DNA of 64,000 nt, from NCBI GenBank assembly GCA_976226885.1, contig OZ320323.1:39990001-40054000 (forward strand), written 5' to 3'. The notes beneath the pieces are model-generated. The model was given only the letters and a program-made list of their open reading frames with translations, ran no database searches and was not told the DNA's origin. Positions 5,092 to 64,000 of the stretch are shown here, in pieces. Position 1 is the stretch's first letter; each line of letters starts with the position of its first letter. The position numbers were made by a program, and so were the translations under genes. This DNA comes from Iphione sp. A-MEVVRFRX5. Taxonomy: Eukaryota.

Positions 5092-5202
5092 CCCAGTCGC
5101 ACATTTTTACTCTTCCCCTCTGAAGTATAGCTCTAGGGAGGGATGATTTGACCCATGTTCTCATATAACTCTCAAAGACCACTGCAGCACGAACTGGAGA
5201 TG
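5092..5202 (-). CDS. Possible exon of the minus-strand gene (SPVRAAVVFESYMRTWVKSSLPRAILQRGRVKMCDW)
   Basis: 111 bp, phase 1-1; strong GG|gtgagt donor; weak acceptor. Confidence 0.3.
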
Positions 5203-5738: not shown

Positions 5739-6620
5739 TTACTGGAAACACAGATATTTTTAATAGGCCTAATAGACCTCTAAGTCCCTCCCTAATAATG
5801 GTCAGAGGGTTTGACAGCAATTATTCATAGGTCTTACCGTAAAGGTGACTCAGACTGTCAAGTAACCCATTAGAAATATACGACTTCACTGAGCAATCTT
5901 TGTCATAAAGTACAAGGATGCGGAAACAAAGTGAGTCTGAGTGAAAAGAATGTGTACCACTCGGAGACAAGTTAAGACTCGCTTTACGAGCGCCTATAAG
6001 ATAAGTCATCGCAAACATCTCTAGAACCGCCTCTCGTTTCAGCAGCTGAACAGAACCTGCTAATAGGCGATCTCGCATAAAGTACGCACTGGGAATAGTA
6101 GCGCGTAGTTAAGATCCTGGAAGATAAACCAACATACGAAAAAAAATCGCCCGGTTCTATAGCATGCGTGAGTCTCTCTCAACCTCCTGAAACTCTGGCA
6201 GGCGGGTCCTGAGCGAAAGCACGCATCTCATCACGTGAAGAGAGACCCCGACGTCATTGATGTGATGTCGGCAAGAAAGAGTGGACTTATAGAGTAGGAA
6301 GCAAATGGATTTCAAATTGGGAGGGAATCATTGTTTGAAAGACAGCGGGAAGCGAGGATCAGGAAAGGGAAATAAGGAGACTTACAGTCGTAATTGTTCG
6401 TGGTAATGAACTGAAGTGACAGAAGCTTCAGGAAGCCTGGTGGCAATGGTCCATAGCTTCACAGAGGTTTTGAGTTTTTCCTTGCGTGATCCACATTTTA
6501 ACGGCACAGCCTATTCTTTGCGAATAAAGATCTGAACTATGGTGCAGCACGGAAGCAATAATTTTGTACTTAATTTTGATACGGACATTTTTTTAAACTG
6601 AGATAATGCATAAAGATGTG

Positions 6621-6766
6621 CATAGAGATTGGCATATAGATTGACGCAAAAATTGGCATAGTGATTGACACAAAAATTGGCATAGAGATTTTCATAGAGA
6701 TTGGCACAGAGACTGGCATAGAGATTGGCATTGGGATTGGCATAGGGATTGGCACAGAGCTTGGCA
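6621..6766. repeat. 12-bp minisatellite (ATAGAGATTGGC)n, degenerate
   Basis: About 12 tandem copies; produces spurious PI/IG-repeat ORFs. Confidence 0.9.
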
Positions 6767-9974: not shown

Positions 9975-10139
9975 GGGGCGGCCATGTTCTCCTCGCCTCC
10001 ATCCTCTCAGCGCCGGCGGTAGAGAGCTGAAAGCTGAGATTCACCACCAGGACATTGTCAACGGGGACCACCCCCCCCCCTCCCCCCTACCCCTCCCACA
10101 CACTAACCCACCGCCACCCACCCACCTCACGCATGCGCA
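9975..10139 (-). promoter_or_regulatory. Candidate promoter/start of the minus-strand gene
   Basis: NRF1-like ACGCATGCGCA at 10129-10139; AACATGGCCGCC (YY1-like, Kozak ATG at 9985-9983) on the minus strand; GC-rich. Confidence 0.35.
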
Positions 10140-10970
10140 CCACAAAACAGGAGTGACAGGAAACGAGGCTCACGACTGCAAAGAGGCCTTTCAAGACGTA
10201 TTAAATTTGTCCTCTTACTTAACGTTGACGCACGCGAGAAAGTAAAAACACAAACTGCACCGTTCATCAAACTTGATAAGTTACTGCAAGAAGTTTCCTT
10301 CATTCTCGTATTCTATGAGAACGTCGAATTCGAGCGCAACTGTATTAAACTGCAACTAATAATGGGAAACTGAAAGGAAATTCTTTTTTTAAAGTTTGCA
10401 AGACAGACATGATGACGACGGTTCTGACGTATATTTTCCAAAAAATTTCAGTCTGTAATAATATGATTACAGGTTTTCAGCAGATTTATTTAGTGTTCGT
10501 CAATCAAATGCTTACCTGTTCAGCTCAGTGGGGGGAAGAAAGGTTTGTAGGATAAACCATTGAAGTCTAGAATTCGATAAATGAATGCACTTTACAAAAG
10601 CACCATTAATTTTCCCTCAGTTATGAGCCGATTGGCATAGATTTTGAAATTCTGTGTAGCTACGCAAACATTTTTTTCTGGTGACTAATCTCATTATAAT
10701 CTCATAGTAGCGTCGAATCGGACCATCATTGAGAATATATCTGTGGCCCTACATTTTTCTGGCTAAGGAGGGATATCTCTAAGTCATATGATATACACCT
10801 TGCCAGTATTTGACGGAAAAGAACCTCCCCTTACTGATAACAACCAGTGCAAGGTGGAAAGGGTGCTTGTACTATATTATATTATACTAGACATGCAGTA
10901 GAGACTCACAACTAGGTTTCTAGATAGTACAATGGATGATTAGCCAAAAGGTGTGTTCTGATCAAGATCA

Positions 10971-12569: not shown

Positions 12570-13585
12570 CGGCTGTGTCCCATGTGCCAGGATCCCCACA
12601 CTCACAAGGCTACTATTCCTTCTGTTACACTAGCAAATAATAATCGTGCATTGTCTACTGTCACATTAGTGATGGGCGGTGGCAGTGTCCCACACCCAAT
12701 ATTAAGCAACCATATATGAAAGTTTATACTTAACACCAAGTTAATTAACTTAGGAATAGAAGGCTTTGAATTCATAATTTGCCATTGGAGCAGAGGGGTC
12801 GAGCTAAAGCTTGTAGCAGACATAATCAATTAATCTCTTATATAATTCTCTAGTAGGCTTAGGAATTAATAATCTCCTTTTATTGTAGGACCTAGTCACT
12901 CTTTGTTTGCTACTCGCTCTGCCATAAAGTGCCCCATCATTAACAATCCTCTATTCATATTTGATACAAAACTCTCTTGTTACTTCTTCAAATGTGAATC
13001 TGTTGTGGCCAAAAGCCACATTTAATACACCCATACGCAGGTGCATTAGTCAAATGAATGTTTTTGCTTTAATATTTGTATTAATGATTTTGTTACTGGG
13101 AGTATCATCGTACGAGCAAGCCGAATGGCATTTTTCCTACCTAGGTACCTATGAACTTTCCTGAAGTAGGTAAATCTTCCCAAAGTTTCCTTATGGTTCT
13201 TAGATGGCTATTAACCATTGTAGGCCTTTCATCTAACACCACCCCCAAGTACAAAATCTCACTCATCACTTCGATATTGTGTCCATGCACCCATTCTTAT
13301 AGACCTCCCCAAGGGTACATCTCTCCTGGTCCCATACCGGAATACAACACATTTAGTCTTGGAGTGATCAATCAAGATTTGAGAGTTCAAGGACCGTTGC
13401 CATAACAAGTTTCCCAAACTTTCAATTTCTCCTTGCAGTTCATCAGCTGAATTAGCTTGTAGAATCACTGCCACGTCGTCCGCATATACACAAATCACTT
13501 GCAATTTCTGAGACTAGCAGGGAGATCTTTAATGAAAAGAAACACAGGGGCCCAAGGCATATTTAACCTTTGCTACAAGTTGTAG
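12570..13585 (-). mobile_element. 5'-truncated, decayed non-LTR retrotransposon (RT plus C-terminal Cys motif)
   Basis: YADD at 13475-13486 in VICVYADDVAVIL; upstream degenerate LGPLCF..KDLP; 3' PCECGDPGTWDT (12572-12609); many stops and frameshifts. Confidence 0.75.
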
Positions 13586-19197: not shown

Positions 19198-19607
19198 TAG
19201 AGGATACTCAGGAACACTGTGGCATACTTGGAGGACTTCTTCTCATGGACTTTACCACACTTTTGGAGGAATTACTGGAAGCTTCAAGACATTCTGCTCA
19301 TGACTCAGCACTTTTGACCTAACTGCACAGATAAGTTCTAGGACTTTTTTCACTGCAAATATTTCACTGTATTGATGTCCTGTGCTTATATATGACTACA
19401 TGGATTGTTTCTGATGTTGATGATCATTCTGAAGGAGCCAAAAAGACTGAATTATTGACATTTTCTGTGAGTGATAATAGGGGATTTCCAATGCTAAAAT
19501 CCTATTGGAATCTGCCTAATCTGATGCAATACCTGGTTGAGCTGTTTGACCTACTTTTTGGACTTGGCTTCTTATAAACTGTGTTTTGGTATATCTGATG
19601 CTTGACA

Positions 19608-22600
19608 ATGGCAACTACAAGTCTCTTTCCCCCACCTGGTGCTCTGAATATTACATCTGGTAATATTGCTGAAAACTTCAAATTATGGAAACGCCAATTT
19701 GAAATCTATCTCAAGGCAAGTGGGAATGACAGACCTGACATGGATGGGGAAACCAAAGTTGCTATACTGTTAGCATGTGCTGGACCTGATGTGATCAAGA
19801 TATATGACCAATTTCAATTTGAAAATGATCAACAGAAACATGATGTGAAGATTGTGCTACAATATATTGAGAGATATTGCATGCCCTTGAAGAATGAAGT
19901 TGTTGCTTCGCATAAATTTTGGTCTACTCCATACTCTGCTCCTTTTGACAATTTTCTTACTGACTTGAAAACTCTTGCCAGTGAATGTAATTTTGGTGAG
20001 TTCACTGATCGTCTCATCCGAGATAAGCTAGTGTTTGTCACCAAAGGACGACTGCAGAATCGTCTCCTGCGTGAAACTGACCTTACTCTGGAAAAGGCTA
20101 TTGCTATTTGTCGTGCTGATGAAATGGCAGAACTACATGGTAAGGAGTTTGAAAAGTCTAAGAGCATTGACAAGGTCAAACCAAAGCCTGGAAAGAAGGT
20201 ACAGAAAGACAAGAGCAATACAACTGCAGCTCCAACACTGAAGTACAACTGTAAATTCTGTGGAAAGAAGCATAAAGCCAACAAGGAAAGCTGTCCTGCT
20301 TATGGTAAAGACTGCAGAAAATGTGGGAAGCAGAATCACTGGGCTAAGCTCTGTCCAAACAAGAAGAATCTCCAGTACTTAGCTGAGGATCAACTTGATT
20401 CATTTGATGATGGAGTCTGGCTTGGTGCTGTCCACAACACTGGACATAAGACAGTGCGAGCAAAAATGATTGTCAATGACTGTGAAGTTTGCTTTGAGTT
20501 AGACAGTGGTGCAGAAGTTAACACCATACAGAAGAAGTATGTCTTGCGAAGTCAAGTACGACCATCTAATGTTAACCTGACAATGTGGAATCATACAAGT
20601 CAAAAGCCACTAGGAGAAGCTACTCTTGAGGTCAAGAATCCTAGGACTGATGAAACTACTCAAGTCAATTTTTTGGTGGTACCTAACAAGTTGCGCTCTC
20701 TGTTAGGCATCACAACTGTCCAGAGGATGAATCTTGTGACCATCAATGAAGATAACTTCAACATTGCAACTGTCACTGCATCACATCTTGGTGATCTTGG
20801 TGAAGTTCATCTCCATATACTAAAGGATGTTCAACCACGAGCTCTACCCTGCAGAACTGTACCTATTGCTCTACGTGAAAGGGTGAAGCAGGAACTGGAT
20901 CGTCTGGTGTCATTACATGTCATTGAGCTTGTTGACAAACCTACTGACTGGGTAAGTCAAATGGCTGTGGTAGAAAAGCCTAATGGTTCTCTTAGGATTT
21001 GTATTGATCCTCAACCTCTGAATGTCGCTCTGAAGAGAGAACATTTCAAACTACCAACTTTTGATGAAGCTATACCACAACTGACAAATGCCAAAGTCTT
21101 CAGTCGTCTGGATGTTGAGAGTGCATTCTGGCATGTTAAACTGGATGATGAGTCTAGTGATTTGACAACAATGATCACACCATTTGGATGCTACAGATGG
21201 AGGAGACTACCATTTGGTCTGAAAGTATCAAGTGAGGTTTTCCAAAAGCGTCTTGTACAGGCCTTAGAAGGTCTGGATGGTGTTCTCTGTGTTGCTGATG
21301 ATCTTGTTGTAATCGGACGTGGTGATACTCTTGAAACAGCAAGACAGGACCACAAAGTCAACCTGAAGAAACTCCAACAGAGATGCAAAGAAAAGAACAT
21401 CAAGCTGAATGACAAGAAAGCTGACATTGAAAAATCTAGCATCACTTTCATGGGACATGTGATCTCTGCCCAAGGCATTAGCCCTGATCCTAAGAAGGTT
21501 CAAGCTGTTGTTGAAATGCCTACTCCAGAGGATGTTAGTGGAGTTAGAAGATTCTGTGGTTTTGTACAGTACCTCTCTCGCTTCATGCCTAAACTGGCAG
21601 ATGATCTGAAACCACTTCGTCAACTGACACGTGATGATGTGTCATGGAACTGGTCGACAGAATGTGATGATGCTGTACAAACCATCAAGAAGAAAGTGAC
21701 AGAGACTCCTGTATTAACTTTCTATGATCCACAAAAAGAGCTTATGATCCAAGTGGATAGTTCTAAAGATGGACTTGGTGCTGCTTTACTTCAAAATGGC
21801 AAGCCTATTGAATTTGCATCAAGGACTCTGACTGACACTGAAAGCCGATACGCACAAATTGAAAAGGAATGTCTAGCAGTAGTATTTGGTCTAGAGCGTT
21901 TTGACCAATACACATATGGACGTGAGGTGATCGTGCAGAATGATCACAAACCATTGGCTTCTATCTTACAGAAACCCCTAAGTCAGTCTCCAAAGCGACT
22001 ACAGGCAATGATACTGCGAATTCGTCGATATGATATTCGGTTTCAGTACCTGGAAGGTCGAGACCTTATACTGGCTGATACCCTAAGTCGTGCTGCATTG
22101 GAAACTACGATGACTAAACAGAAGAAAGTCTATGCTGTGAGGTCATTCAAGTACATGAATGTGTCTGATGCAAGGCTAGGAGAGATTCGTGAAGCAATTC
22201 TTCATGATGACACCATGCAGACACTAATCACAACCATAAGGGAAGGATGGCCAGACAGTATTGACAAAGTTGATAGACAGATCAGAGCTTACTATGATGT
22301 ACGTGATTGTCTGACAATTGATCAAGGACTGATTTTGAAAGGTGAAAGACTAGTCATACCTTGTGCTATGAGACCCCTAGTCAAGGAAAGACTTCATGCT
22401 GCTCATCTAGGAAGAGACAGTATGTTGAGACGGGCTAGAGAGCTTGTTTACTGGCCTGGCATGAACAAGGAAATTGAACAGATTGCCAACACTTGCCCAA
22501 CCTGTTTAGAGTTCAAACCTCGCAACCAGAAAGAGACCCTGAAACAACATGATCTCCCAGACCAAGCATGGTTGAAAGTTGGTGTCGACTTATTCACCAT

Positions 22601-23507
22601 CTCTAACCGAGACTACCTGGTAACTGTGGACTACTACAGCGGTTTTTGGGAAATTGACTACTTGTCAACCACTTCAAGCAAAGCAGTAATCCTGAAGTTG
22701 AAGGCACACTTTGCAAGATATGGTATACCCAAGGTGATAATGTCTGATAATGGACCACAATTTGCTTCAGCTGAGTTTGAACGATTCATCAGTGAATGGG
22801 GCATTGTTCATCATACATCTTCACCTGGCTACCCAAGGTCCAATGGAAAAGCTGAGGCTGCTGTCAAGGCTGCAAAGACAATGATCAAAAAGGCTCTGCA
22901 TGATAACAGAGATCAGTATGCTGCTCTGTTAGAGGTGAGAAATACTCCCATTCAGAGTCATGGGAAAAGCCCTGCCCAGTTGATGTTCCAGAGGACAACA
23001 AGGACATTGTTGCCATCAACAAATGATGTGCTCAAACCAACAACTCCCTGCAACATCTCTAAAAGACAAGTAGAAAGGAATAAAGCTGTGAAGAAGCACT
23101 ATGACAAGTCTGCAAAAGACTTACAGCCACTAAAGAAAGGTGACCAAGTGCGCATCTATCCCATAGATGGTAGAAAGACTTGGGACAAAGGTGTAGTCCA
23201 AGAACAAGTAGATGATCGATCTTATAACATCAAAGGCGAGTCTACAGATTCTACATACAGACGCAACCGTGTACATCTCAGACATGTACCTGATGAACGA
23301 CCTGTTCAAGATGTACCAACTCTATCTTCTGTACCGGTGACAACTACAAAACCAGTGCAGAGTGGTGCATCTCCAGTAGTACCATCCCAAGTGAACATTG
23401 ATGTACCAGCTGACAACATACCATCCAATGATACAACTCCAAGATCATGTCGTACTAAACGACAAACTCGTCCACCAGTCTGGATGAAGGACTATGTAAC
23501 TAAATAA
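19608..23507 (+). CDS. Gag-Pol polyprotein (about 1299 aa from the first ATG)
   Basis: Gag with two zinc knuckles CKFCGKKH..C and CRKCGKQNHWAKLC (20250-20355). Protease LDSGA (~20500). RT LRICIDP, PFGL and VADD (21291-21302). RNase H VDSSKDGLGA/EKECLA/DHKPL. Integrase HAAH..CPTC, DLF, SDNGPQF and NGKAE. C-terminal RPPVWMKDYV. No stops or frameshifts. Confidence 0.97.
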   Translation: MATTSLFPPPGALNITSGNIAENFKLWKRQFEIYLKASGNDRPDMDGETKVAILLACAGPDVIKIYDQFQFENDQQKHDVKIVLQYIERYCMPLKNEVVASHKFWSTPYSAPFDNFLTDLKTLASECNFGEFTDRLIRDKLVFVTKGRLQNRLLRETDLTLEKAIAICRADEMAELHGKEFEKSKSIDKVKPKPGKKVQKDKSNTTAAPTLKYNCKFCGKKHKANKESCPAYGKDCRKCGKQNHWAKLCPNKKNLQYLAEDQLDSFDDGVWLGAVHNTGHKTVRAKMIVNDCEVCFELDSGAEVNTIQKKYVLRSQVRPSNVNLTMWNHTSQKPLGEATLEVKNPRTDETTQVNFLVVPNKLRSLLGITTVQRMNLVTINEDNFNIATVTASHLGDLGEVHLHILKDVQPRALPCRTVPIALRERVKQELDRLVSLHVIELVDKPTDWVSQMAVVEKPNGSLRICIDPQPLNVALKREHFKLPTFDEAIPQLTNAKVFSRLDVESAFWHVKLDDESSDLTTMITPFGCYRWRRLPFGLKVSSEVFQKRLVQALEGLDGVLCVADDLVVIGRGDTLETARQDHKVNLKKLQQRCKEKNIKLNDKKADIEKSSITFMGHVISAQGISPDPKKVQAVVEMPTPEDVSGVRRFCGFVQYLSRFMPKLADDLKPLRQLTRDDVSWNWSTECDDAVQTIKKKVTETPVLTFYDPQKELMIQVDSSKDGLGAALLQNGKPIEFASRTLTDTESRYAQIEKECLAVVFGLERFDQYTYGREVIVQNDHKPLASILQKPLSQSPKRLQAMILRIRRYDIRFQYLEGRDLILADTLSRAALETTMTKQKKVYAVRSFKYMNVSDARLGEIREAILHDDTMQTLITTIREGWPDSIDKVDRQIRAYYDVRDCLTIDQGLILKGERLVIPCAMRPLVKERLHAAHLGRDSMLRRARELVYWPGMNKEIEQIANTCPTCLEFKPRNQKETLKQHDLPDQAWLKVGVDLFTISNRDYLVTVDYYSGFWEIDYLSTTSSKAVILKLKAHFARYGIPKVIMSDNGPQFASAEFERFISEWGIVHHTSSPGYPRSNGKAEAAVKAAKTMIKKALHDNRDQYAALLEVRNTPIQSHGKSPAQLMFQRTTRTLLPSTNDVLKPTTPCNISKRQVERNKAVKKHYDKSAKDLQPLKKGDQVRIYPIDGRKTWDKGVVQEQVDDRSYNIKGESTDSTYRRNRVHLRHVPDERPVQDVPTLSSVPVTTTKPVQSGASPVVPSQVNIDVPADNIPSNDTTPRSCRTKRQTRPPVWMKDYVTK

Positions 23508-52500: not shown

Positions 52501-55500
52501 TACCACCCTTGGACTATCATCACCCTCCTCCCTCCTCGCATTTCTTTCCTTTCGTGTATTTTGTAGCAAAGGGAAGGCTTTTCTGATTATGCCTCTGATT
52601 TCCCGTACGTTCATGTTTTGCAGAAAGCACAGCAGCGGAGATTTACACAGTCGACTCAAAACACGAAAGCTGCTCGGAGTGGGAGAAACAGACGACGGTG
52701 ATGTCCACAGGTCAAAGGTAACTACTCATTCCCTCTTAATGAGAATCTTACCCGAGCGAGCGGCTAGTTGTTTCAAGTATTAACAAATCATCAAGGTAGG
52801 AAAGCCTCCGTCGTGTACCAACTAGTATTGTGGGTTACTGAAAGATTCACATTCAGGTTTCAACTTGGGATAGATTAATGCATATTGCTTTATGGCAAGG
52901 TACAAAGACATTAAAAACGTCTCATTTATAGAGTGTTTCAGACGATCCTTTAATACATCGGGATTCGAGAGAAAAAGGTGTACTTCCTGTTTGGCGCACT
53001 GTAGTTAACATGTGTAATTCAGGTAATTGTATCATAACTAATATTTCAGATAGAGAAAAATCCTTTGGCACACATGTTACTATACTGAAGAAGGACAATT
53101 TTTCCACAAAATATTAAGCGAGAGATGATTCTTTCATTAGAGAGATACCTTTGAAGTGACCCTTACTTTTGGAGGGTGGTTATGGTCTTCAAAATGTGTC
53201 AAAAACTAAAGTTAGAGTTGATGAAAACTTTAATCCCTCAATTACTTCAAGAAAACATATTAAGTATCCTTCGCTGCTAATATGAGTTCTGTAGGATAAT
53301 CAATTCATTATTTTTGCCAATCTCCAAGATAGAGTTCCTTCATTATCACCCATTGTGTCTTGTCAGTGTAAAATCAAAACAAACCTGTGCGAGAGTGAGG
53401 CTAGCCCCCTTCCCACTAACATTAGTTAGTGTTAGTTTCTTTTTTTAATTTCCTATCCTTGATGATGTGAATTCAATATTGATTAGTGATAAAACATAAA
53501 ACACTGGGCTATTTCCATATCAGTTTCTAGGATAAATAATGTTACTTACATGTATTGTCTCAATGTCTACACGATCATCGGTAATGGAAGATTTTTTCCT
53601 TTTGCATGCATTCTCAGTCTATAATTATTAGAGTACATGTAGTTGTGTCGCAGGAACAAATACCAAACACAGTGTCCCCTTGGACTAAGATTATCTCTCT
53701 AATCAGACCACCTTCCCAATAAGACCATTTTTAAGGAACAGAATTAGATACATGTATAAAAAAAACACCCTCTTTAATAAGACCACTCCCTATTCAGACC
53801 ATTAAATTTTGAGGTCAGAACCAATAGTGGTCTTATGAATGTAGGAGACTTTTGGTTATCTATTTCGGTTCTGAAGACAGCTTGGAGCTTAACTACAGGA
53901 ACATGAACCTGAGAATTATTTTGAAGATGTTTGGATGAAGGCCCTACCATGATGGGTTTCGCACCATGATAAGTGTCCCAGTGGGTGTCCCATCACAACT
54001 GACAGTTTGGGGAATTCATCCCAGATCTGAGAATAGAAAGACCTAAGCTAAATGAGACATACTGTGTTGCACTAGGATTAATATTTGTCTACAATGAGTG
54101 TCCAGCCATAAAAAGTGTCCAACCGAAACGGGTATGGAATCCCCGTAGTGTTTTTGGATTTCATGTTTGAGCATGAGAGTCTAAAACTAAAATAAATGGA
54201 ACTTAAACTGAAAAAGTTGGGATGCATGTCCTACTTGGGTGGGACGTCTCTTAAGGATATTTGTTTAACTAATATGGAAGCCCCATCATGATACCATTCC
54301 ATCTGCCATTAATGCTATTGTTCCAAGTCAACAAGGAGGGTTTTGTTTTTCCTTTTCCAGCTTAGTCAGATACTGGGTCACAGCGAGCAGCTCTATGTGC
54401 GCTTACCACGTGGATTGAGGTTATGGCAGCTGCTCACAGCCATCATGTTTACAACTATAGGTGTTTGGGTATGTCTTTGTTTGTGTAATATCATAATAAA
54501 AATAGCAGAGATTTCTGTGAAGAACTGTACAAGAATCTGTTTTTTTTATGAAGTAGACATTAGAACGGAGAGAACATATGATTCTATTTACATCTGTATT
54601 ATATAATGTAATTACATGGAAATGTACATAGACCACTCAAGGAGAGAATTAAGAACAAGAGTTTAAATAAAATGTACATAATTATTTACATTATACCTAA
54701 CTTAAACGACAGACTAATTAGTGACGTCCAAGCTTTGTAAAAGAGTATCTACTGTAACTTTCCCCCCATGATGAGGCATATGATCAAAAATAACTAGTTT
54801 AATTGTCTCATCTTTACCTCTTTTGGACTCTGACGTCATTATATGATCTAGATACATATCATTCAAAGATGCAGAAATAATAAACATAGAACGTCAATTT
54901 CGAAACAAGTTGCTGCAAAATTTATACACGTATTATAGTTAGTTTATTCATTTTTAAATGGAAATTTGAACACAAATATCATGAAATTAGTGAATTCACC
55001 CATGTTTTACAGGACACAGGAACACGAAGAAGCGCACACATTCCCCCCTTCGGGCTGCCTGTCTGTCTCTTTCTGTCAGTCTTTCTTGCTCTCATTCACT
55101 GCGTTTGCAGACCTTGCGTGCATGAACAATTAAACAAACTTTCTTGACCAAATAGCATAATACTGCTTAGAGACAGAAGACCGGTTACATGTACAATAGC
55201 AGCTCACCATGTAAGCAACTCAGCTAAGAGGGCAACTCAGCATCAAGGTCAGGTTCGATTGGTCAGTCCTATAGTGGTCTGTTTTCTAGAATATAACCAG
55301 CTTATGAAGCAGGGTAATTCAGTTGAGGGCGAAATTGCCAATTCCCATTGGTGACGTCCATTTTCAGATAGTACAGGTAACTATATTTCACATGTAGATG
55401 ATGTATGTAGAAAGCCTTTCTTGTTTCTTTTCCAGGCCCTGCTTTTCCCTCGACACCTATTTCATGTGGCCCTGAATTCCGATGCCGAGATGTCCGCTAT

Positions 55501-58500
55501 TCTTCCCATCAGACTCTACGGTGGCGCCCTCATCAGTAAGCTGGGTTTTTCTTGTAATATCGCAAGTATTTAGGTGTAATTGCCAAGGCAATCAACTCAT
55601 TGTGCGGGTCCGACGATTATTTCCCCTAAAGAGGTAGCTTGACGACAGATGAGAAGAATGTCGCGAAATTCTGCACGTCCATAGCCTCTCATGAAGTCAT
55701 CAAACTGTAGAGTACCATATTATAACATTTGATTCTTTGCTGAATTGTTGAAAAAATTGTCACAACGGGATTTGCTTTGCATAGCTGTGCAACGTGTTTT
55801 CCGAATATCGCGAAATGGAATGTGTTCATCAATTGAAAGTCTGTTATTTCCTAACAAATGGTTAAAGGTTGTAGGTGGGTGGCTGACGCCTTTATGCAGG
55901 GTACCTACAAAAGTCCTGGGATCCACTCAGGTTTAACGATGTTTGCATAGCCTTGAAACATATCGCGCAATGCAATGCTTTCACTGGTGGATGTGTTAAA
56001 GACAATTAGAAAGCTCTCAGGAGTAAGTAAAAAACCCTCGTTACAGGCCTGTGGCTGAAGTTGTCAACACTTAATTGAAAATTATATATGCGACAAAACC
56101 TTATTTTTTGCACATTTTGGAGCCACGATGCTACATTATTCAATAACATTCCTCGACGCAATCTTTGATAACGTAGGAAATGATGATGGCCTTTAAAACA
56201 TTTTCCTATTTGTTTTTTTTTTTCGTTTCAGGTTTATCCGTCGTTTTCTGGTGTACTCTACAATCAGTAGACAAAGACATCATACGATGGTCTCTCCTGG
56301 GAAGCGCTGTCTATTTTATCATTCAAATTGTGGGTGAGTTGGCCCTTTCCCGACCTATTCTCACGATGCTACCACACTAGCTTTACACGCCTATGGACAA
56401 AAGTATCCATCGTTGCTTTCTCAGTGGATTTAGAATTTTTCCAAAGCCACACGATACATCCATAGAATATTGCTTCTTTTTGTGATATCATAGTCAGAAT
56501 TTTCAAATGCCGTAACTTGATTTTTGTGTGTTCTGTATTTTAATTTGATGATGAATATATGTTTGTTGTAGTCTGCCTGTACACAAAGTCCCGTATACGT
56601 ATTAGATAAGGTACGAGTTCGAGGGGTTACTGTCTATAATGGACGAGCTTCGCGGAGCGAACGAGTCAATTATAGACATGTAACCCTGAGAACGAGCTAC
56701 CTTATCTGATTTAAACCACCCCCCCCTACTACTGAACGATTTGCCGACCCAGCCAAGAAGATTGGGTCCGCCGAGGCGACAGCCGAGGCAGCCGTCAAGC
56801 ACCCCCACCAGTCCAGAAGGTTTATAGGCCGCCGAGGCGCCAGCCGAGACGGCCGTCACATTCAACACCCTTCAAAAGTCAATGAGGCGAAGCTAAGGAG
56901 AGCATTGAATTGGCTCGGCTAGAACAAACTCGGCGAGGACATGTTTCTTAAAATAGTTGATAAGGTGAAACTGAGGAGAGCGTGTGAGTGTTGGAATGAT
57001 TATAGAAAGGTACGAAAATATAATGTCCTCCCATCTATGGTGTAAGAAACACTGTTATAATTGTGGAAAAAAAAGAAAGAAATTTGAAAAAGAAGAAAAT
57101 GGGAGTGTGGGGGTCTCCCCCCATTAATGCAAGGGAAAAAAGGAAAAAAATCTGGAGGCTATGCCAAAGATGCATTTAATTTATGAGAAAGTGGCAAATA
57201 TTTCCGGAGGTAGTGCTAAAAATGTGTTTAATTCATGAAAACCGACAAATATTATGGGAGGTTTTGCAAAAGATGCACTGAATTTACAAAAAAGTGGCAA
57301 ATATTTCTGGAGGTCATGCTGAAGATGTATTGGATTTATGAAAATATTTGAAAGAAAAAGGGGGGTGTGGGGGTCTCCCCCCCACATTAACAAATTTATG
57401 AAAGTATATTTCATTGAAAAATGAAACAACTAAGCATACTTCATCTTCAACCCTTGAATGAATGAAAGAAGTATGGTCTAGCCTATGCACAGCCTCTGTG
57501 GCGCAGTGGACAAGAGCGCTGGCCTTCACATAGGTTATGTATGGAAGGCTCAGTCATGCTGTGGACCCAGGTTCGAACCCTTCAGAAGACCTTCCCACAT
57601 TTCGTCAGAGAACTTGAAAACAAAAACACATCACTTCGAATACCATAGGATAAACACAACGATTACTGGATATAATGGACTTGGGGGGATGATAGAGACA
57701 TAGAGAGAAACGGGTTGTAGGGGTGGTTTAAATACCCTAACAAATCATGTGCAATCTCCTTTCGTAGTATGGAAAGTTATTTTAGTTTTGGGGGTAGTAA
57801 TAGAATCCACTGTGTGACGGAGTGGGATGGGTGGGCTAGAGTAAGGCTTAAAAATTGTTCTTAAAATGAAGAGATGCTCTTTGCTACATAGTGCTCCTTA
57901 CTTTCACGATTCATACTACGAGAGGCGACTGTAAATATTTCTTCAAGACAACCCAAAGTACAAGTTTGTAAACTACCACGACTGAAACCTTTTTACATTT
58001 TCATCCAATAGGGATGAAATCTAGTTATCTGTATCGCCTGTCTTTTTAGTTACATTGAATCAATGTTCCAAGTATTTAGTTATACATGCCTTCGTCTGTT
58101 GTTACAGTTCTGTTGATTCTGTTTTAAACAGATTGATAAATCACACATTTTTTCACCGTTTTGGGTGATCTTTCTATGTGACTATAATTGGAAACATTCT
58201 ATAGTTTGTCGAAGAATTTCAGTGGCAGACGAAATTTATCTCATTATCAGTGACCAGCAAGAAATGTCAAATATCTCAATCAATTAGTCTTGGTCGGTTT
58301 CTTAGTTCATCCAAACATCTTTCTCGCGCCCGCTGCAGTAGAATTTATTTGTATAACCCAGCTCATTTATAGGTTTTTAACTTTTATTCATATGATTTAG
58401 CAACCTTGAGGCCATCTTACTCACCCAGACATTTTTGCCAGTTATTTCCTGCCTCAACTAATTTTCCTTAGACGACCACCTTTTTTCACAGATCATAACT

Positions 58501-60556
58501 CCTTTCATGTTCTTAGAAGCACTCACACTTTGGTGACAGAAACCATGAACACGTATTCACCTCACACTAATACGTTATATTCCTTACATTTATTTCTTTT
58601 ATTCATTCGCAATAACATCTAGCATCAGTTTGGCAAAGAGTAGCCTACTTAATGTCCCCTTGGCGTCTTCTCTTGCAGTGCTCCTGACTTAACAGCGACA
58701 TTCTTGGAAACCATCTATAAACCCTTTCACCCCGTGGGCTCCCTATATTTGTCAGGTTGCCGGAAAGAGGGCCCCTCTCATTCCAATGAACAAGAAAATT
58801 CCATTAGCCTGCTTTTAATCCTTACGTACAGGTATCTCTATGAAGCGCTTTCCTCCATTCTTAATGCAGCTTTGAAGACAGAAATATGAGGGAAACTTCG
58901 AGTAATTAATTTCGAAGAATAAAGCTGAATATGGCCTGGATTCTTGTGACCTCTCATCATGTAGCTCTCCCCATAGAAACAGTTGAATTTTAGCTGATCA
59001 CCAGCAGTTATCATAAAAGATAAGTGATATAACTCATCTAAGACAGTTTACAACTGCCAATGTCAACATTATTACAGCCAAGCGGTATCCATACTAAATT
59101 AAGACAGTGTTTCCTTCAACTATCCTATTTCATTCAAATCATTACAAAATTGCCATAGAATTACTGAATGTACCCTGATTTTATTATTTACATTACAAAT
59201 TTTGCAACATTCAAACCTCCACTGTATAGGTTATTACAGATCCATTTTACCAGTATTCATGGCATATATGCCATCCTCATTAAGTCTCCTTCATACGAAT
59301 ACAGGGCTAGATTATCATCGACCACCCATTAACCTAGATTATTCATCAAGTCAGTATGTATCTTACATGCCCATTATTATTGTAGCCCAGCCCTCTCAGG
59401 TAGCTTTTCTCAGACAAATGTCCACTCATGTCCTTCCAGCAGTCCTCATGGTAATATTAGATGAGTAAATAAGCCATTCACCCTGCCTAAAAGTGAGTCC
59501 TATAATTTTCACTGCTAATGAGCTAACTGACACAGACGACCCCTCTCCACCCCAGCACTTCTGAGACAAACACCCCATGTTTCCATAGGATCAATAGTCC
59601 GTGTGCTCAACTTTCTTATTTGTCATGCATTTGGCGAGAGGAGAGCGGAGGCCTATGCGTTTAGTCAATAAATTGCCGTTTATGTAAACATGAAGGAAGT
59701 ATTGGAGATACATCCATCCCAAGCTATTAATGGTATACATACATGAATCCATTTGGAAGGAGGACATATGAAACTCATACAGAATTCACAGAAAACACGA
59801 TTTCTTCGAAATATTGATTCACAGATCTGATTCTTCAGAATACATCAGTTAGAAATCAAAAGCTNNNNNNNNNNNNNNNNNNNNNNNNNNNNNNNNNNNN
59901 NNNNNNNNNNNNNNNNNNNNNNNNNNNNNNNNNNNNNNNNNNNNNNNNNNNNNNNNNNNNNNNNNNNNNNNNNNNNNNNNNNNNNNNNNNNNNNNNNNNN
60001 NNNNNNNNNNNNNNNNCAGTGCTTCCAAACGTCGCACCGGCAGCCCTAGAGCTCAACTCTGAGCCAAGTACCCAGGCGGCTATGTGGATATACGGATGAA
60101 CTTGTCTTGATCCATGGAGTAAAAGCAACTTATAGATGGACAGAACAAAAGACTCCATGAGATTAGAAGCCTAACCCTGCACCATGCTGTGTGAGGTCCG
60201 CCCACACGTCTTCCCGACCCTGACGCCCCTAATGCGCCCACTATGTTTTGGTTTTCAGTCTCGACCACCTCCTCTCCTTGCTCCTCCTCCTCTGCTGACA
60301 CCGCTGCTGGGACCGGCGGTCGTGCGAAGGGCCTCTTGATGCTGACGATGGCCTTAGTGCACATCTTGCTCACCGCCTATTTCTGGCTGGGCACCGGTTC
60401 GCGGCTGTCTCACCATGCGCCGCAGTGCAAGATCGAGCGCTCAAAGGTCGGGCGACCTTGACACTTGTCCTGCGCAACCGAGACTGTGGCCCTGGGACGC
60501 TGTGACGTCGTCTGGTTCCTCTCGTTTATCACATTCTCGCCTCCCCCACCCGCGCC

Positions 60557-60631
<75 letters not shown>

Positions 60632-63373
60632 GTCAAATATCCCTATCTCTCTTCTTTTCTGTTTATGGACAGAGCTATGGATATTCTTACAGAGATCTCT
60701 ACTTTAGCCTGTCTGTATTCTATGTTATTCCCCCTGTCTGTCGTCTCACATATCTCTAACCTGCACGCCCAAAGTCTTTTGGTATCTGTGTCAGATTTTG
60801 TCTGATTCTATATTTCTGATCTTGTTTGTGTTTTTCTGCCTGTGTTTGCCTGATCGTGTCAATTTCTATCATTCTGTCTGTCTTTGCCTGACTACATCTG
60901 TTTCTGTTGTTCTCTCTCTCTTTTGCCTGGCTGCATCTTTTGTCATTTTCTTTACGTCTTCATCTAACTCCATCTGTTTCTGTCACTCTGTCTTTGCCTG
61001 ACTGTATCTGTTTCAGTCATTCTGTCGGTACCTGACTGCCTTTCTCCTCCGCCCTGGCCCAGCCCCGTTCGTATATGTAAATATGTGTCTTTTGGCCTCG
61101 TCTGTGCGCATATAAACTATATGCGAAAGACTGCATCCGTTCTTAAAATCCTGTGGCAGACTGAGAGTGTGTGATCCATGCCACAGAAGACCCACGGCCA
61201 CAGTTCTCAAATCAAATTCCAACTCTCCTTTTCCTGCTGAAAAAAAGTCCATCTCACTTGCTAGGAATGGTTTGAGACGAAAACCTAACATCACCAACTT
61301 GCCCACCTGAGTCCAAAAGTTTAATCGTACGTATACCTTTGCAGGGATATTCAGATACGATATACATGAATATAATTATTTCGGACATTAACGACCGAAA
61401 TAATAGTGTAGAGCTCAAACAATTTCTTGCAAGTGAGGTTTTGTATTAAGTTGCTTAATAGAGTGTCATTTCCATTGTGTCTGTTTTTTTCATGATTTGC
61501 TTTTGTATAATTTCTATTCGCTTGAATATCATTTGATACTGTATGTATTTTCAGTAGGAACCTCTCACTTATTTTTGTCAGAATTCCTATGCTTGCGTTC
61601 TATATGGAAATGACACAGCTTAATATGGTTTTGACAAGTCAGTTTCTTAATTTTTCTTCTTTGCACATCAATCATGTATGGGCCTCTTGCACAATGATCA
61701 GTTGCTCTGCTTGCCTAGTAGAGCTTTTGCACTAACACATACGCCTTCTCTATTTTTTCCTTCGGTCTAACCCTCTTTATTCGTCGAATGTCGCCCGTGT
61801 ATTCGATTGTTAGATATACAGTTGTTACCTTAACGGAAAACGTACCAGACGTGTTGGAAGTCGGTTCCCTATGAATTATTAAGCACATCTGAAGTTCTTT
61901 AGACAGTCATTAGGGGTGGACTGGTTTCGCAAATACGTCCGGGCAGGCCTTGTACGAAGTTGGTTTTAGATTTCGATGCGTCAATGTGATTATAGAAAGT
62001 TATTCCTCTGCGGTGTTTTTTTTTTCGAGGGAATATGTCCTAGAACATCGTAGCTTTCCACCTCTGCGTAACTACGTTAACTCTAGGAAATGTACTACAA
62101 GGCGAGTGAAATTAAATAATGTTGATGGAAGGAAGACGAAACGGTAGAATATGGCGGGGTTTTTTTCTGGGCGTAATTGGGATCAGCGCTGAGTTATGTG
62201 AAACCGTCTGTAGAGGAAATCACTTCTCTGCAGAAAGTTGAAGAAAAAAGGAGGAAAGCCAGAGGAAGCAATGGCGGTTCATATAAACTATACTGCTGAA
62301 CGATTAGGTTCCCAGTGTAATGTGTTAGATGAGGCGAAATCCTCAGTAATCGTTCTTGCTTTTTAGTCCAAATTCGCGGCTTAATTCTCGTTCTCGCAAT
62401 GTCTATTTGCACTTCATCAAAACGAATCTTCAACAGGAACTGCAAGCTACATGGAACTGAAAATATTTATCCAAAAAGAACAGATCTCTCGGAAGTAAAC
62501 TACATGTCAGACTGAGGTCAATGAAATGTGTATTAGAGTAGGGGGGATCAAGGTTTTGTTTACCAAGCGGAAAAGATATCATTTATTCGTAGTCCTACGA
62601 TTTTATTTATGATGTGTTGTAAATAGGTAATTATGTGTTTGATATCAGGAATACATATCATTCAATACACGTCATGTCAGCCTGTTTTGCATGGTCCACT
62701 TTCTTCTCCGTTTCGTCGTTGTCCAACATTCTCCGAATGCTGTGTATTCTTGATCTGTTACCCATAGCAAGATCACTGTTCTCTCGCCAGAAATACCCAA
62801 ACTGAGCCAACTAATGATGAGGATTTTCCCCAATGCCTGTTCAGCTTTCCTGGAAGAATGAGGCTCTTTCTTTAGATAGTTATTAAATAGCGTTAAGTCC
62901 CTCGAAGGCGCCAATCCTGCTATAGTAAGTCTACTTCATAACATGCCACGAAAAGCGTGAAAATTTTGTCCCACAAGATAATCATTTGAGACGAACTCTG
63001 CCTGAAACCGAATATTTTGTTGACAGTTGTATTTATCACAAGCCACTAAATAATACTGGAAATAAAAATAGTCAATATACTACACATAATGTTCACACAG
63101 AATTTCGGTAAGGCATTTATGACGATCAAATAATGTCCCGATGTCTTAACGTGTTTGAAACTTGCTTATAAACATTTCCTTCTTGAATATTCTCCCTCAG
63201 TAACGTCAACCTGGCTGTGGGAGGAAGGGCGGCTACTCCAACTCGGGCTCAGTCTCCTCACCCATAGAGTTATCTTCGCTCTCATTTCACTCGGCTACTA
63301 CTGGGCGGTGGGCGACAAGGTCACCAAGATGCGAAGGAGCAACTCAGCCTCGGATCTGAGCAAGTCCCAGTAG
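49545..63373 (+). CDS. TP53I11: TP53-inducible protein 11 (PIG11) homolog, 4-TM membrane protein. Model join(49545-49579,52624-52717,54361-54468,55436-55535,56232-56333,63201-63373), 612 bp, 203 aa
   Basis: The spliced product (..[75 protein letters not shown]..) matches recalled vertebrate TP53I11 ([32 protein letters not shown]; [11 protein letters not shown]; KVIIRWTLL). All junctions are GT-AG with consistent phases 2/0/0/1/1. The first exon used is only one of several candidates. Confidence 0.93.
51299..51418. repeat. 31-bp tandem repeat x4
   Basis: CCATGATAGAACCACAGATATATAGTGGAAT, head-to-tail. Confidence 0.93.
52624..52717 (+). CDS. TP53I11: TP53I11 constant exon (KHSSGD...HRSK), phase 2 in / 0 out
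   Basis: ttttgcag|A AAG CAC ... TCA AAG|gtaact; highly conserved peptide. Confidence 0.95.
53668..53850. mobile_element. Degenerate MITE with repeated AAGACCAC subterminal motifs
   Basis: Starts ACAGTG; repeated (a)AGACCA motifs with an inverted GTGGTCTTA near the right end. Confidence 0.35.
54361..54468 (+). CDS. TP53I11: TP53I11 exon (LSQILG...IGVW), TM1
   Basis: ccttttccag|CTT ... TGG|gtatgt; 36 codons. Confidence 0.94.
55436..55535 (+). CDS. TP53I11: TP53I11 exon (ALLFP...[10 protein letters not shown])
   Basis: tcttttccag|GCC ... ATC A|gtaagc; PIRLYGGAL signature. Confidence 0.95.
56232..56333 (+). CDS. TP53I11: TP53I11 exon (SLSVVFW...IQIV)
   Basis: cgtttcag|GT TTA ... GTG G|gtgagt; IIRWSLL motif. 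Confidence 0.95.
57492..57590 (+). pseudogene. tRNA-Arg-like pseudogene or SINE head
   Basis: GCCTCTGTGGCGCAGTGGA resembles the 5' end of tRNA-Arg(TCT); box B GGTTCGAACC at 57570-57579; acceptor stem has 2 mismatches; insertion in the anticodon arm. Confidence 0.6.
57870..59100 (-). mobile_element. Highly decayed LINE RT remnant in the TP53I11 intron
   Basis: Minus-strand VKSGALQ../[16 protein letters not shown] (58606-58694) resembles the RT motif G..QG..LSPLLF; 3' CTLGC..ESKEHYV-like remnant; heavily disrupted. Confidence 0.45.
59865..60016. other. Assembly gap (152 N)
   Basis: N run inside the last TP53I11 intron. Confidence 1.
60259..60461 (+). CDS. TP53I11: Candidate alternative TP53I11 terminal exon A (VSTTSS...[23 protein letters not shown]...VGRP*)
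   Basis: ttttggttttcag|TC acceptor in the required phase 1; GC-rich coding-like composition; 20-aa hydrophobic helix ending YFWLG, parallel to YYWAVG of exon B. Confidence 0.6.
60560..60631. repeat. Perfect (CT)n microsatellite
   Basis: About 35 CT units, downstream of candidate terminal exon A. Confidence 0.97.
63201..63373 (+). CDS. TP53I11: TP53I11 canonical terminal exon B (VTSTWLW...SKSQ*)
   Basis: tctccctcag|TA ACG; hydrophobic TM4 followed by GYYWAVG, matching vertebrate IYYYYQVG; TAG stop. Confidence 0.92.
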
Positions 63374-64000
63374 AGTGGGTTCTGTATGACAACTATACTA
63401 CAAGACTCGCCCCCCGAAAAGAGAGCAACTCCCTTCTGGGAAGCCCGGGGGCGGCATTCATTAACCCACTGAGCAAATTGTTATTAGCTCTTATAACTGC
63501 CTTCTGTTGAATCAGTAGGATCAGGTATCAGCAAACGAGATGAAGACTAATGTTCAGGATGTAATCTGGTTTATTTTGCTATCTTTTAAAGACTTGCAAA
63601 AAACGATTTTGCAACGTGATGTCGAAATCTGGGGGTATTTCTGAACACTGACTTGCTTTATGAATCATACATTATTATATATGTTGGAAAAGGTATTCGT
63701 ATTTTCGCACCGCTATTTTGTGTTTTGAGGGCCTATTGCGAAAAGAATTACCGTCTGGTATATATAACGACTTTGACAGGTATACGTGCCACGTTTATTG
63801 TAGTTACACTTTGGATCAACGAACAGTGGCTGGTCCAAGCGTCTGTCCATCTGTAGCCACAAACGTGTGTATCTCGTAAACATTGACCATACAGAGCGCA
63901 ACGTACCAGGTACTGGAGGAAAGTATACCTATCCTTAGGAGAAAGTGTTGAGGATTATAGGTTCTCCAGGAATGATCTTTGAAAGCGGGTGTGTTTGCAC

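What the first reader, a model, noticed from the sequence alone, without database searches (positions are those of the whole stretch)
60259..63373. Two mutually exclusive terminal exons encoding alternative TM4 and C-tails
Seen: both 60259 and 63201 follow good polypyrimidine-AG acceptors in the needed phase 1 (G|TC and G|TA, both Val). Both encode a hydrophobic helix ending in an aromatic pair plus Gly ([21 protein letters not shown] vs [22 protein letters not shown]). Exon A adds a longer Ser/Gly-rich loop and the tail [22 protein letters not shown] at 63061-63066 could end an exon-A transcript just before exon B. Inference: an ancient exon duplication gives alternative last exons; with the variable first exons, isoforms would be combinatorial.
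Basis: partly seen in the sequence, partly recalled or inferred. Interest (0 to 1): 0.7.

Follow-up and report, generated by a model that had tools for sequence, protein, structure and literature searches.

The report
Conserved alternative last exon in worm TP53I11
A worm gene for the small four-helix membrane protein TP53I11 carries, inside its last intron, a second end-exon that selection has kept as protein-coding in a distantly related worm, so the gene most likely makes two proteins that differ in the fourth membrane helix and the tail; no RNA data could be obtained to show the exon in use.

Summary
The gene is a TP53I11/PIG11 homologue (Pfam PF14936). Its constant exons are 52624-52717, 54361-54468, 55436-55535 and 56232-56333. 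Exon B (63201-63373) is the canonical last exon (Pfam positions 138-178).

Exon A (60259-60461) matches no Pfam family and has no BLASTP similarity to B, but it is real. A second worm genome (locus L001) has saturated synonymous sites and unalignable introns. There, the only collinear conserved blocks are the five canonical exons plus exon A, between exon 3 and exon B.

- The 31-codon core of A is 82% identical in DNA, with 12 synonymous and 5 non-synonymous changes (omega about 0.1, P = 1.6e-4).
- Only the proposed frame is open in both species.
- The acceptor TTTGGTTTTCAG|TCTC is identical, and phase 1 is kept.
- Both versions encode a strong hydrophobic helix.

Best reading (about 0.7): an alternative 3' terminal exon that swaps TM4 and the cytosolic tail.

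Not supported or untested:
- A and B being ancient duplicates is not shown (hhalign probability 3.5%).
- The poly(A) site is undefined.
- Usage is unknown, because no RNA run was listed.

A conserved in-frame ATG just upstream keeps a nested small-ORF rival alive (about 0.1). The mechanism is ordinary and new only for this family.

The parts
52624..52717 (+). Constant exon e0 of the TP53I11 homologue (…[31 protein letters not shown]); it takes 1 nt to complete a codon and ends in phase 0
   Evidence: Pfam PF14936 positions 2-36, E 2.9e-10, 40.9 bits. Conserved in L001 at 1064-1180, about 90% aa. Splice sites read.
54361..54468 (+). Constant exon e1 (TM1 region)
   Evidence: Pfam PF14936 positions 35-68. 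89% aa identity to L001 2730-2837, omega 0.03.
55436..55535 (+). Constant exon e2; ends in phase 1
   Evidence: Pfam positions 71-102. 79% aa identity to L001 5039-5137.
56232..56333 (+). Constant exon e3 (TM2 end and TM3); donor G|gtgagt in phase 1, shared by exons A and B
   Evidence: Pfam positions 104-135. 97% aa identity to L001 6543-6641. The donor phase is the same in both species.
59865..60016 (.). Assembly gap (152 N) in the e3-A intron, 243 nt upstream of exon A's acceptor; left unfilled
   Evidence: Exons A and B lie on the same contiguous stretch after the gap.
60243..60258 (+). Conserved stretch upstream of exon A: ATGT then TTTGGTTTTCAG. Read as the polypyrimidine tract plus AG acceptor. 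It also holds an in-frame ATG (60243-60245) that is conserved in L001 with a 3-nt indel
   Evidence: 16 nt, TTTGGTTTTCAG|TCTC, are identical between the species, while the polypyrimidine tracts of the constitutive exons are not conserved. ATG-started ORF 60243-60461.
60259..60461 (+). Exon A, a candidate alternative 3' terminal coding exon. It encodes (V) + a 66-residue loop, TM helix and basic tail, with stop TGA at 60459-60461
   Evidence: Translation. Syntenic homologue in L001 at 10020-10240. It is the only frame open in both species. Kyte-Doolittle 19-mer maxima are 2.04 and 1.77. No Pfam match.
60366..60458 (+). Conserved core of exon A ([31 protein letters not shown]): the end of TM4' and the tail
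   Evidence: 82% nt and 27/31 aa identity to L001 10103-10195. Mismatches by codon position are 3/3/11. 12 synonymous versus 5 non-synonymous changes, omega 0.095, P = 1.6e-4.
60560..60630 (.). (TC)35 microsatellite in the presumed 3' UTR of an exon-A transcript
63201..63373 (+). Exon B, the canonical last exon (TM4 and tail ending …SKSQ, stop at 63371-63373)
   Evidence: Pfam PF14936 positions 138-178 in the window and 138-177 in L001. 57% aa identity to L001 12623-12790, omega 0.12.

Best explanation
Exon A (60259-60461) is a genuine, evolutionarily maintained alternative 3' terminal coding exon of an annelid-type worm's TP53I11/PIG11 gene.

The shared phase-1 donor of exon 3 (56333) can be joined to either of two acceptors:
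- The proximal acceptor at 60259 gives exon A. The transcript then ends at a still undefined poly(A) site between A and B.
- The distal acceptor at 63201 gives exon B, the canonical form.

The two mRNAs encode proteins with identical TM1-TM3. They differ in the TM3-TM4 loop, in TM4 and in the cytosolic C-tail:
- A has a longer, variable Ser/Thr-rich loop, a more hydrophobic helix and the strongly conserved tail [19 protein letters not shown].
- B has the family-typical helix and a tail with a conserved basic-N-S segment ending in SKSQ.

Shown: the conservation, the coding-type selection, the acceptor and phase, the TM character and the synteny.

Inferred: the splicing of e3 to A, that A is terminal, that A is the regulated or minor form (its polypyrimidine tract is interrupted by GG), and that the swap changes partner binding or regulation rather than topology (both tails are basic next to the helix).
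For: 1. Gene identity and exon chain. Pfam PF14936 is covered collinearly by e0 (2-36), e1 (35-68), e2 (71-102), e3 (104-135) and B (138-178).
2. A word search with the exon A peptide found one protein, P0001 (E 2.2e-11), on a 1.9-Mb ENA contig. Its locus L001 carries e0, e1, e2, e3, A and B in the same order and strand.
3. The two species are far apart. Synonymous sites are saturated (pS 0.71-0.78 in e1-e3 and B). No intron aligns: blastn finds only e1, e2, e3 and the exon A core (84.6% over 91 nt, E 6e-23).
4. The substitution pattern is coding. In the 31-codon core, 11 of 17 mismatches fall at codon position 3. There are 12 synonymous and 5 non-synonymous changes, omega 0.095, binomial P 1.6e-4. 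Over 44 codons omega is 0.26, P 0.003.
5. Only the proposed frame is open from the acceptor to a stop in both species. The unalignable loop differs by exactly 24 nt, which preserves the frame.
6. The acceptor TTTGGTTTTCAG|TCTC is identical in both species and synonymous changes begin right after it. The polypyrimidine tracts of the constitutive exons are not conserved. The e3 donor phase (G|gt) and G|TC = Val are kept in both.
7. Both A versions contain a TM-grade hydrophobic 19-mer (Kyte-Doolittle 2.04 and 1.77, against 1.61 and 1.41 for B), followed by a tail that starts with basic residues.
8. pS in the A core (0.49) is below the pooled constitutive exons (0.73; P 0.012). From general knowledge, lowered synonymous rates are typical of regulated alternative exons.
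9. No conserved phase-1 GT lies inside the core, and there is no conservation downstream of the stop. This fits a terminal exon better than a cassette exon.
Against: - There is no transcript evidence of any kind. No RNA run was listed for this DNA, so the junction 56333->60259 is unobserved.
- Only one other species supports the conservation.
- The exhaustive HMMER search of 1.84 billion representatives found no annotated full-length TP53I11 protein with an A-type C-terminus. Besides P0001 it returned only two repeat artefacts. Such isoforms could, however, be hidden inside 50%-identity clusters.
- The stop codon is not conserved. A 2-nt difference moves it, and the L001 tail is 14 residues longer.
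- No conserved poly(A) signal exists. The first AATAAA/ATTAAA lies about 1.65 kb downstream in both species, but the surrounding sequences do not align.
- An in-frame ATG is conserved 5-6 codons upstream of the acceptor. An independent small ORF would also explain this.
Confidence: 0.7

Rival explanations
1. Nested small gene. The block is an independent small ORF (72 aa in the window, 60243-60461; 79 aa in L001). It would encode a single-pass membrane micropeptide, transcribed from its own start inside the intron and translated from the conserved ATG, without splicing to TP53I11 exons.
For: An in-frame ATG lies 5-6 codons upstream of the putative acceptor in both species. The two differ there by a 3-nt (frame-preserving) indel, and conservation begins at about the ATG. 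The ORF was called as a stand-alone gene in the ENA assembly. It has no similarity to the Pfam TP53I11 model.
Against: - The five codons between the ATG and the AG show no synonymous change, although pS is 0.5-0.7 elsewhere (roughly 0.01-0.06 by chance). This fits a nucleotide-level splice signal better than a coding stretch.
- The element has a perfect YAG acceptor in exactly the phase exon 3 needs, in both species.
- It replaces precisely the part of the protein that exon B encodes (loop, TM helix, basic tail).
- Same-strand nested small-ORF genes are rare compared with alternative last exons (general knowledge).
- The ENA gene call comes from an ORF caller that needs a start codon, so it is not evidence for a start site.
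Confidence: 0.1
2. Internal stop-carrying ('poison' or regulatory) exon. Exon A is spliced in between e3 and B using a donor downstream of its stop. The mRNA would encode the same A-type protein or be degraded by nonsense-mediated decay, mainly tuning TP53I11 output.
For: Conserved stop-containing alternative exons with unusually low synonymous divergence are a known class. pS of the A core is lower than in the constitutive exons. No canonical poly(A) hexamer lies within 1.6 kb of the stop.
Against: - Strong amino-acid-level selection (omega about 0.1) and a preserved TM helix point to a translated product, not just a stop cassette.
- The stop position itself is not conserved.
- There is no conserved donor-like GT or any conservation downstream of the stop.
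Confidence: 0.1
3. Not a coding exon. It is either a chance ORF on a conserved non-coding intronic element (enhancer or RNA structure) or a repeat or mis-scaffolded fragment beside the gap.
For: - Exon A sits 243 nt after an assembly gap, in a locally G+C-rich patch.
- It has no Pfam match.
- It has only one relative in 1.84 billion representative proteins.
Against: - Third-position bias and the synonymous excess (P 1.6e-4).
- A single open frame shared by both species.
- A frame-preserving 24-nt length difference.
- The syntenic position between e3 and B on an ungapped 1.9-Mb contig of the other species.
- No other copy in the window.
Confidence: 0.04

Closest known systems
TP53I11 / PIG11 (tumour protein p53-inducible protein 11; Pfam PF14936), the canonical four-helix membrane protein of animals
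   Same: The worm gene's e0-e3 plus exon B cover model positions 2-178 of 179 collinearly. The hydrophobic segments fall where four helices are expected.
   Different: The Pfam model does not recognise exon A's helix and tail in either species. I found no paper in the searched library describing C-terminal or TM4 isoforms of this family, and no protein with an A-type end in the representative library.
Alternative last exon switches coupled to polyadenylation choice, such as calcitonin/CGRP and immunoglobulin mu secreted versus membrane forms (general knowledge)
   Same: One shared upstream donor and two downstream acceptors, each followed by its own stop. The proximal exon lies inside the intron that is removed when the distal exon is used. 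In the mu case the swap also concerns a membrane helix.
   Different: Here the swap replaces one helix of a multi-pass bundle with another helix, rather than adding or removing an anchor or changing a peptide hormone. The poly(A) site and regulation are unknown, and no RNA evidence exists.
Tandem-duplicated mutually exclusive exons (for example in ion-channel genes; also noted by earlier agents elsewhere in this genome)
   Same: Two alternative exons in the same phase encode the same structural element. The aromatic cluster followed by T/V-G aligns in one consistent register.
   Different: Homology between A and B is not demonstrable. The lengths differ (203 versus 173 nt). Both exons carry stops, so exclusivity comes from being terminal exons, not from a splicing-exclusion mechanism.

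Membership tests
TP53I11 / PIG11 family (Pfam PF14936) | Collinear match of the encoded protein to the PF14936 profile | tested here: met
Exon-by-exon hits: e0 2-36 (40.9 bits, above the cut-off of 27), e1 35-68 (25 bits), e2 71-102 (16.5), e3 104-135 (23.5), B 138-178 (15.0; L001 B 19.3).
TP53I11 / PIG11 family (Pfam PF14936) | Exon A's helix and tail match the family's TM4 and C-terminal region (profile positions about 138-178) | tested here: not met
   No Pfam hit at E <= 10 for the window or L001 exon A peptides, with or without the ATG extension.
Alternative last exon (splicing-coupled alternative polyadenylation) | A second acceptor downstream of a shared donor, in compatible phase, followed by an in-frame stop | tested here: met
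   Acceptor cag|TC at 60259 with phase 1 = e3 donor phase, and a stop at 60459 (L001 stop at 10238-10240). Both are kept in two species.
Alternative last exon (splicing-coupled alternative polyadenylation) | The alternative exon is under purifying selection as coding sequence | tested here: met
   omega 0.095 (31 codons) and 0.26 (44 codons); synonymous excess P 1.6e-4 and 0.003; a single shared open frame.
Alternative last exon (splicing-coupled alternative polyadenylation) | Its own cleavage/polyadenylation site between the proximal and distal exons | tested here: inconclusive
   AATAAA/ATTAAA at 62111, 62882 and 63061 in the window and at 11905 and 12300 in L001. None is in alignable sequence.
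Alternative last exon (splicing-coupled alternative polyadenylation) | Transcripts showing both junctions (56333->60259 and 56333->63201) | not testable with these tools
   The look-up of sequencing runs listed no RNA run, so read laying could not be used.
Tandem-duplicated mutually exclusive exons | Detectable sequence homology between the two exons | tested here: inconclusive
   BLASTP finds no alignment at E <= 100. hhalign gives probability 3.5%, E 0.012, 27 columns. Smith-Waterman scores are 34-37 against shuffled 20-23 +/- 4, in one consistent register, but this is inflated by shared hydrophobic composition.
Tandem-duplicated mutually exclusive exons | Same phase and similar length | tested here: inconclusive
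   Both exons start in phase 1. Coding lengths are 203 and 173 nt in the window, and 221 and 173 nt in L001.

The most novel reading that the evidence does not exclude
The conserved block is not an exon of TP53I11 at all. It is an independent single-pass membrane micropeptide gene (72-79 aa), nested in sense orientation in the last intron and kept there across a very deep split between two worms. Or it is dual-use: the same coding block serves both as a spliced TM4' exon and as a stand-alone small ORF from the conserved ATG at 60243.
Probability: 0.1. Interest if true: 0.55.

Novelty: new member of a known kind. Interest (0 to 1): 0.4.

Why it matters
TP53I11/PIG11 is a widely conserved p53-induced membrane protein whose molecular function is still poorly defined. 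A conserved isoform that keeps TM1-TM3 but exchanges TM4 and the cytosolic tail marks that end of the protein as the regulated or partner-binding part. It also provides two natural variants for functional comparison.

For genome annotation, it shows that a short family-unrecognisable exon can be recovered from deep two-species conservation alone. Together with the alternative first exons noted earlier for this gene, it would give roughly four to six protein isoforms.

The mechanism itself (alternative last exons) is ordinary, and so far the exon is seen in only two worm genomes.

Tried and rejected
- **RNA evidence.** The look-up of sequencing runs on 60017-64000 listed no RNA run and the cap is one search. 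Read laying could therefore not be used and junctions could not be counted.
- **More species.** The word search with exon A gave one hit only, and exon B gave no candidate. The exhaustive profile search of 1.84 billion representatives returned P0001 plus two repeat artefacts. Two metagenome scans, one with the exon A profile and one with the exon 3 profile, found nothing confirmed. An exact look-up of the window's 72-aa ORF is not on record. I left the third word search unused: any third species keeping the 19-residue core would already have shared words with the first query.
- **A-B homology.** BLASTP, hhalign and shuffled Smith-Waterman do not demonstrate it.
- **Repeat or misassembly beside the gap.** Rejected.
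- **Cassette use of A.** There is no conserved phase-1 GT in the core.
- **Conserved poly(A) site.** The first hexamers lie at a similar distance from the stop in both species (about 1.65 kb), but the sequences do not align.
- **tRNA-like stretch at about 57480-57600.** ARAGORN finds no tRNA.
- **Literature.** Three searches found no description of C-terminal TP53I11 isoforms.
- **Failed call.** One search failed on a frame slip of mine and was not repeated.


Full report
**What is there**

The + strand of 52.6-63.4 kb carries the constant part of a TP53I11/PIG11 homologue. Scanned exon by exon against Pfam, the pieces hit PF14936 collinearly:

| Exon | Window coordinates | PF14936 positions | E-value |
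|---|---|---|---|
| e0 | 52624-52717 | 2-36 | 2.9e-10 |
| e1 | 54361-54468 | 35-68 | 2.3e-5 |
| e2 | 55436-55535 | 71-102 | 0.0094 |
| e3 | 56232-56333 | 104-135 | 6.5e-5 |
| B | 63201-63373 | 138-178 | 0.027 |

Exon B is therefore the canonical last exon.

Exon 3 ends in phase 1 (GTG G|gtgagt). Both 60259 (…atgttttggttttcag|TC) and 63201 (…ttctccctcag|TA) are AG acceptors that complete a Val codon. Both frames run to a stop, at 60459-60461 and 63371-63373. A 152-N gap (59865-60016) lies 243 nt upstream of exon A. Exons A and B are on the same uninterrupted stretch.

**Is exon A more than a chance ORF?**

Taken alone it would not be:
- The open frame is 88 codons in about 60% G+C DNA.
- It matches no Pfam family.
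- It has no BLASTP similarity to exon B.

What settles the question is a second genome. A word search with the 66-residue exon A peptide returned one protein, P0001 (79 aa, E 2.2e-11), called on a 1.9-Mb ENA contig. I fetched its surroundings as L001. L001 carries the same gene in the same order and strand:

| Exon | L001 coordinates |
|---|---|
| e0 | 1064-1180 |
| e1 | 2730-2837 |
| e2 | 5039-5137 |
| e3 | 6543-6641 |
| A | 10020-10240 |
| B | 12623-12790 |

The two animals are far apart:
- Synonymous sites of e1-e3 and B are saturated (pS 0.71-0.78).
- No intron sequence aligns. blastn of window 45-64 kb against L001 finds exactly four blocks: e1, e2, e3 and 60361-60451 of exon A. The exon A block has the highest identity of the four (84.6% over 91 nt, E 6e-23).
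- tblastx adds e0 and B and nothing else collinear.

Exon A is thus the only non-canonical conserved block in about 11 kb of orthologous locus. It is not a repeat. The window holds no other copy beyond low-complexity Ser/CT-run matches, and the one strong match in L001 is the syntenic copy; the other two L001 matches are 16-18 nt.

**Is the constraint protein-coding, in the proposed frame?**

Yes, on five counts.
- In the 31-codon core ([31 protein letters not shown], 60366-60458), 27 of 31 residues are identical.
- Mismatches fall 3/3/11 by codon position. There are 12 synonymous against 5 non-synonymous changes, and omega is 0.095.
- The excess of synonymous changes has binomial P = 1.6e-4. 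Over the 44 alignable codons omega is 0.26 and P = 0.003.
- Of the six frames, only the proposed one is open from the acceptor to a stop in both species.
- The N-terminal loop is not alignable, but it differs in length by exactly 24 nt, so the frame from the acceptor into the core is preserved.

Both versions contain a TM-grade hydrophobic 19-mer. The Kyte-Doolittle means are 2.04 and 1.77, higher than exon B's 1.61 and 1.41. In both, the helix is followed by a tail that starts with basic residues, so the topology of the canonical protein would be kept.

**Is it an exon of this gene?**

The acceptor argues that it is. The 16 nt TTTGGTTTTCAG|TCTC are identical in the two species, and synonymous differences begin immediately after (TCG/TCT, ACC/ACG). 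By contrast, the polypyrimidine tracts of the constitutive exons e1, e2, e3 and B are not conserved base for base. The e3 donor phase and the resulting G|TC codon are the same in both species.

Synonymous divergence in the A core (pS 0.49) is lower than in the constitutive exons pooled (0.73; P = 0.012). From general knowledge, extra RNA-level constraint and conserved flanking intron are typical of regulated alternative exons.

No phase-1 GT is conserved inside the core, and nothing downstream of the stop is conserved. A terminal exon therefore fits better than a cassette exon.

**What speaks against, or stays open**

- No RNA run was listed for this DNA, so no junction, depth or 3' end could be examined. 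'None was listed' is not 'none exists'.
- Only one other species is available. The exhaustive profile search of 1.84 billion representatives found P0001 and two repeat artefacts, and two metagenome scans were blank. An annotated A-type isoform could still be hidden inside a 50%-identity cluster represented by the canonical isoform.
- The stop is not conserved. A 2-nt difference before TTGA shifts it, and L001 reads 14 residues further.
- Poly(A)-type hexamers first appear about 1.65 kb after the stop in both species, but in unalignable sequence.
- An in-frame ATG sits 5-6 codons upstream of the AG in both species, offset by a 3-nt indel. A nested small ORF (72 and 79 aa) would therefore also explain a conserved coding block. 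I rate it at about 0.1, for three reasons. The stretch between the ATG and the AG shows no synonymous change where 0.5-0.7 per site is expected. The acceptor and phase fit exon 3. The block replaces exactly what exon B encodes.

**Ancient duplication?**

This is not shown.
- BLASTP gives nothing.
- Pfam's family model does not see A in either species.
- hhalign of the two-sequence profiles gives 3.5% probability over 27 columns.
- Smith-Waterman alignments of all four A/B pairs score 34-37, against 20-23 +/- 4 for shuffles. They fall in one register (basic-x-x-G start, aromatic cluster AYFW/GYYW/AFYY, then T/V-G). A plain shuffle destroys the hydrophobic clustering, so this is a hint, not evidence.

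A and B may be old duplicates diverged beyond recognition, or A may have been recruited de novo as a helix-compatible exon. The data do not decide.

**Mechanism proposed**

This is a splicing-coupled choice of last exon. Use of the proximal acceptor at 60259, followed by cleavage before exon B, yields TM1-TM3 plus a variable Ser/Thr-rich loop, a more hydrophobic TM4' and the conserved tail [19 protein letters not shown]. Skipping it yields the canonical TM4 and a tail that keeps a basic-N-S segment and ends in SKSQ in both species.

Because A's polypyrimidine tract is interrupted by GG and B's is cleaner, A is probably the regulated or minor form (inference). The strong conservation of A's tail suggests a binding or regulatory motif (inference).

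Combined with those, four to six isoforms would be possible (not tested here).

**Comparison and novelty**

The gene is a member of the TP53I11 family. The exon A product is not recognisable as that family's C-terminus. The arrangement works like classical alternative last exons (calcitonin/CGRP, immunoglobulin mu). I found no report of C-terminal TP53I11 isoforms in three literature searches. It is a new member of a known kind of mechanism and of moderate interest.

The N gap was not filled. Earlier notes call the organism an annelid-type worm; I did not verify the taxon.

Noticed in passing
window 60560-60630: A perfect (TC)35 microsatellite about 100 nt downstream of exon A's stop, followed by T/C-rich DNA with a 34-nt unit repeated twice at 60956-61038. 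It would lie in the 3' UTR of an exon-A transcript.
   Followed up: partly
window 57151-57344 (flanked by GGGGGTCTCCCCCC-type motifs near 57107-57125 and 57361-57385): A tandem array of a 52/103-nt unit (about 3.6 copies, 67-80% matches) inside the e3-A intron, bracketed by short G/C palindromic motifs. It looks like an internal repeat of a mobile element.
   Followed up: no
window 57480-57600: The stretch looks tRNA-like by eye (…gtggcgcagtgg…ggttcgaaccc…) and might be a tRNA-derived SINE fragment. ARAGORN calls no tRNA there.
   Followed up: partly
window 19602-23507: A 1301-codon open frame on the + strand, by far the longest in the window. It is probably a retroelement polyprotein lying among the candidate first exons. 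I did not examine it.
   Followed up: no
window 63323-63370 and L001 12743-12790: The canonical exon B tail keeps a basic-N-S segment (RRSNSAS in the window, KRCNSSS in L001) and an identical SKSQ end in both species, although the exon is only 57% identical overall. This may be a phosphorylation or sorting motif that the exon A tail lacks.
   Followed up: no
L001 10196-10240 versus window 60459-60461: A 2-nt length difference in the C run before TTGA moves exon A's stop, so the second species has a tail 14 residues longer. The extreme C-terminus of the A isoform is therefore not under the same constraint as the core.
   Followed up: partly
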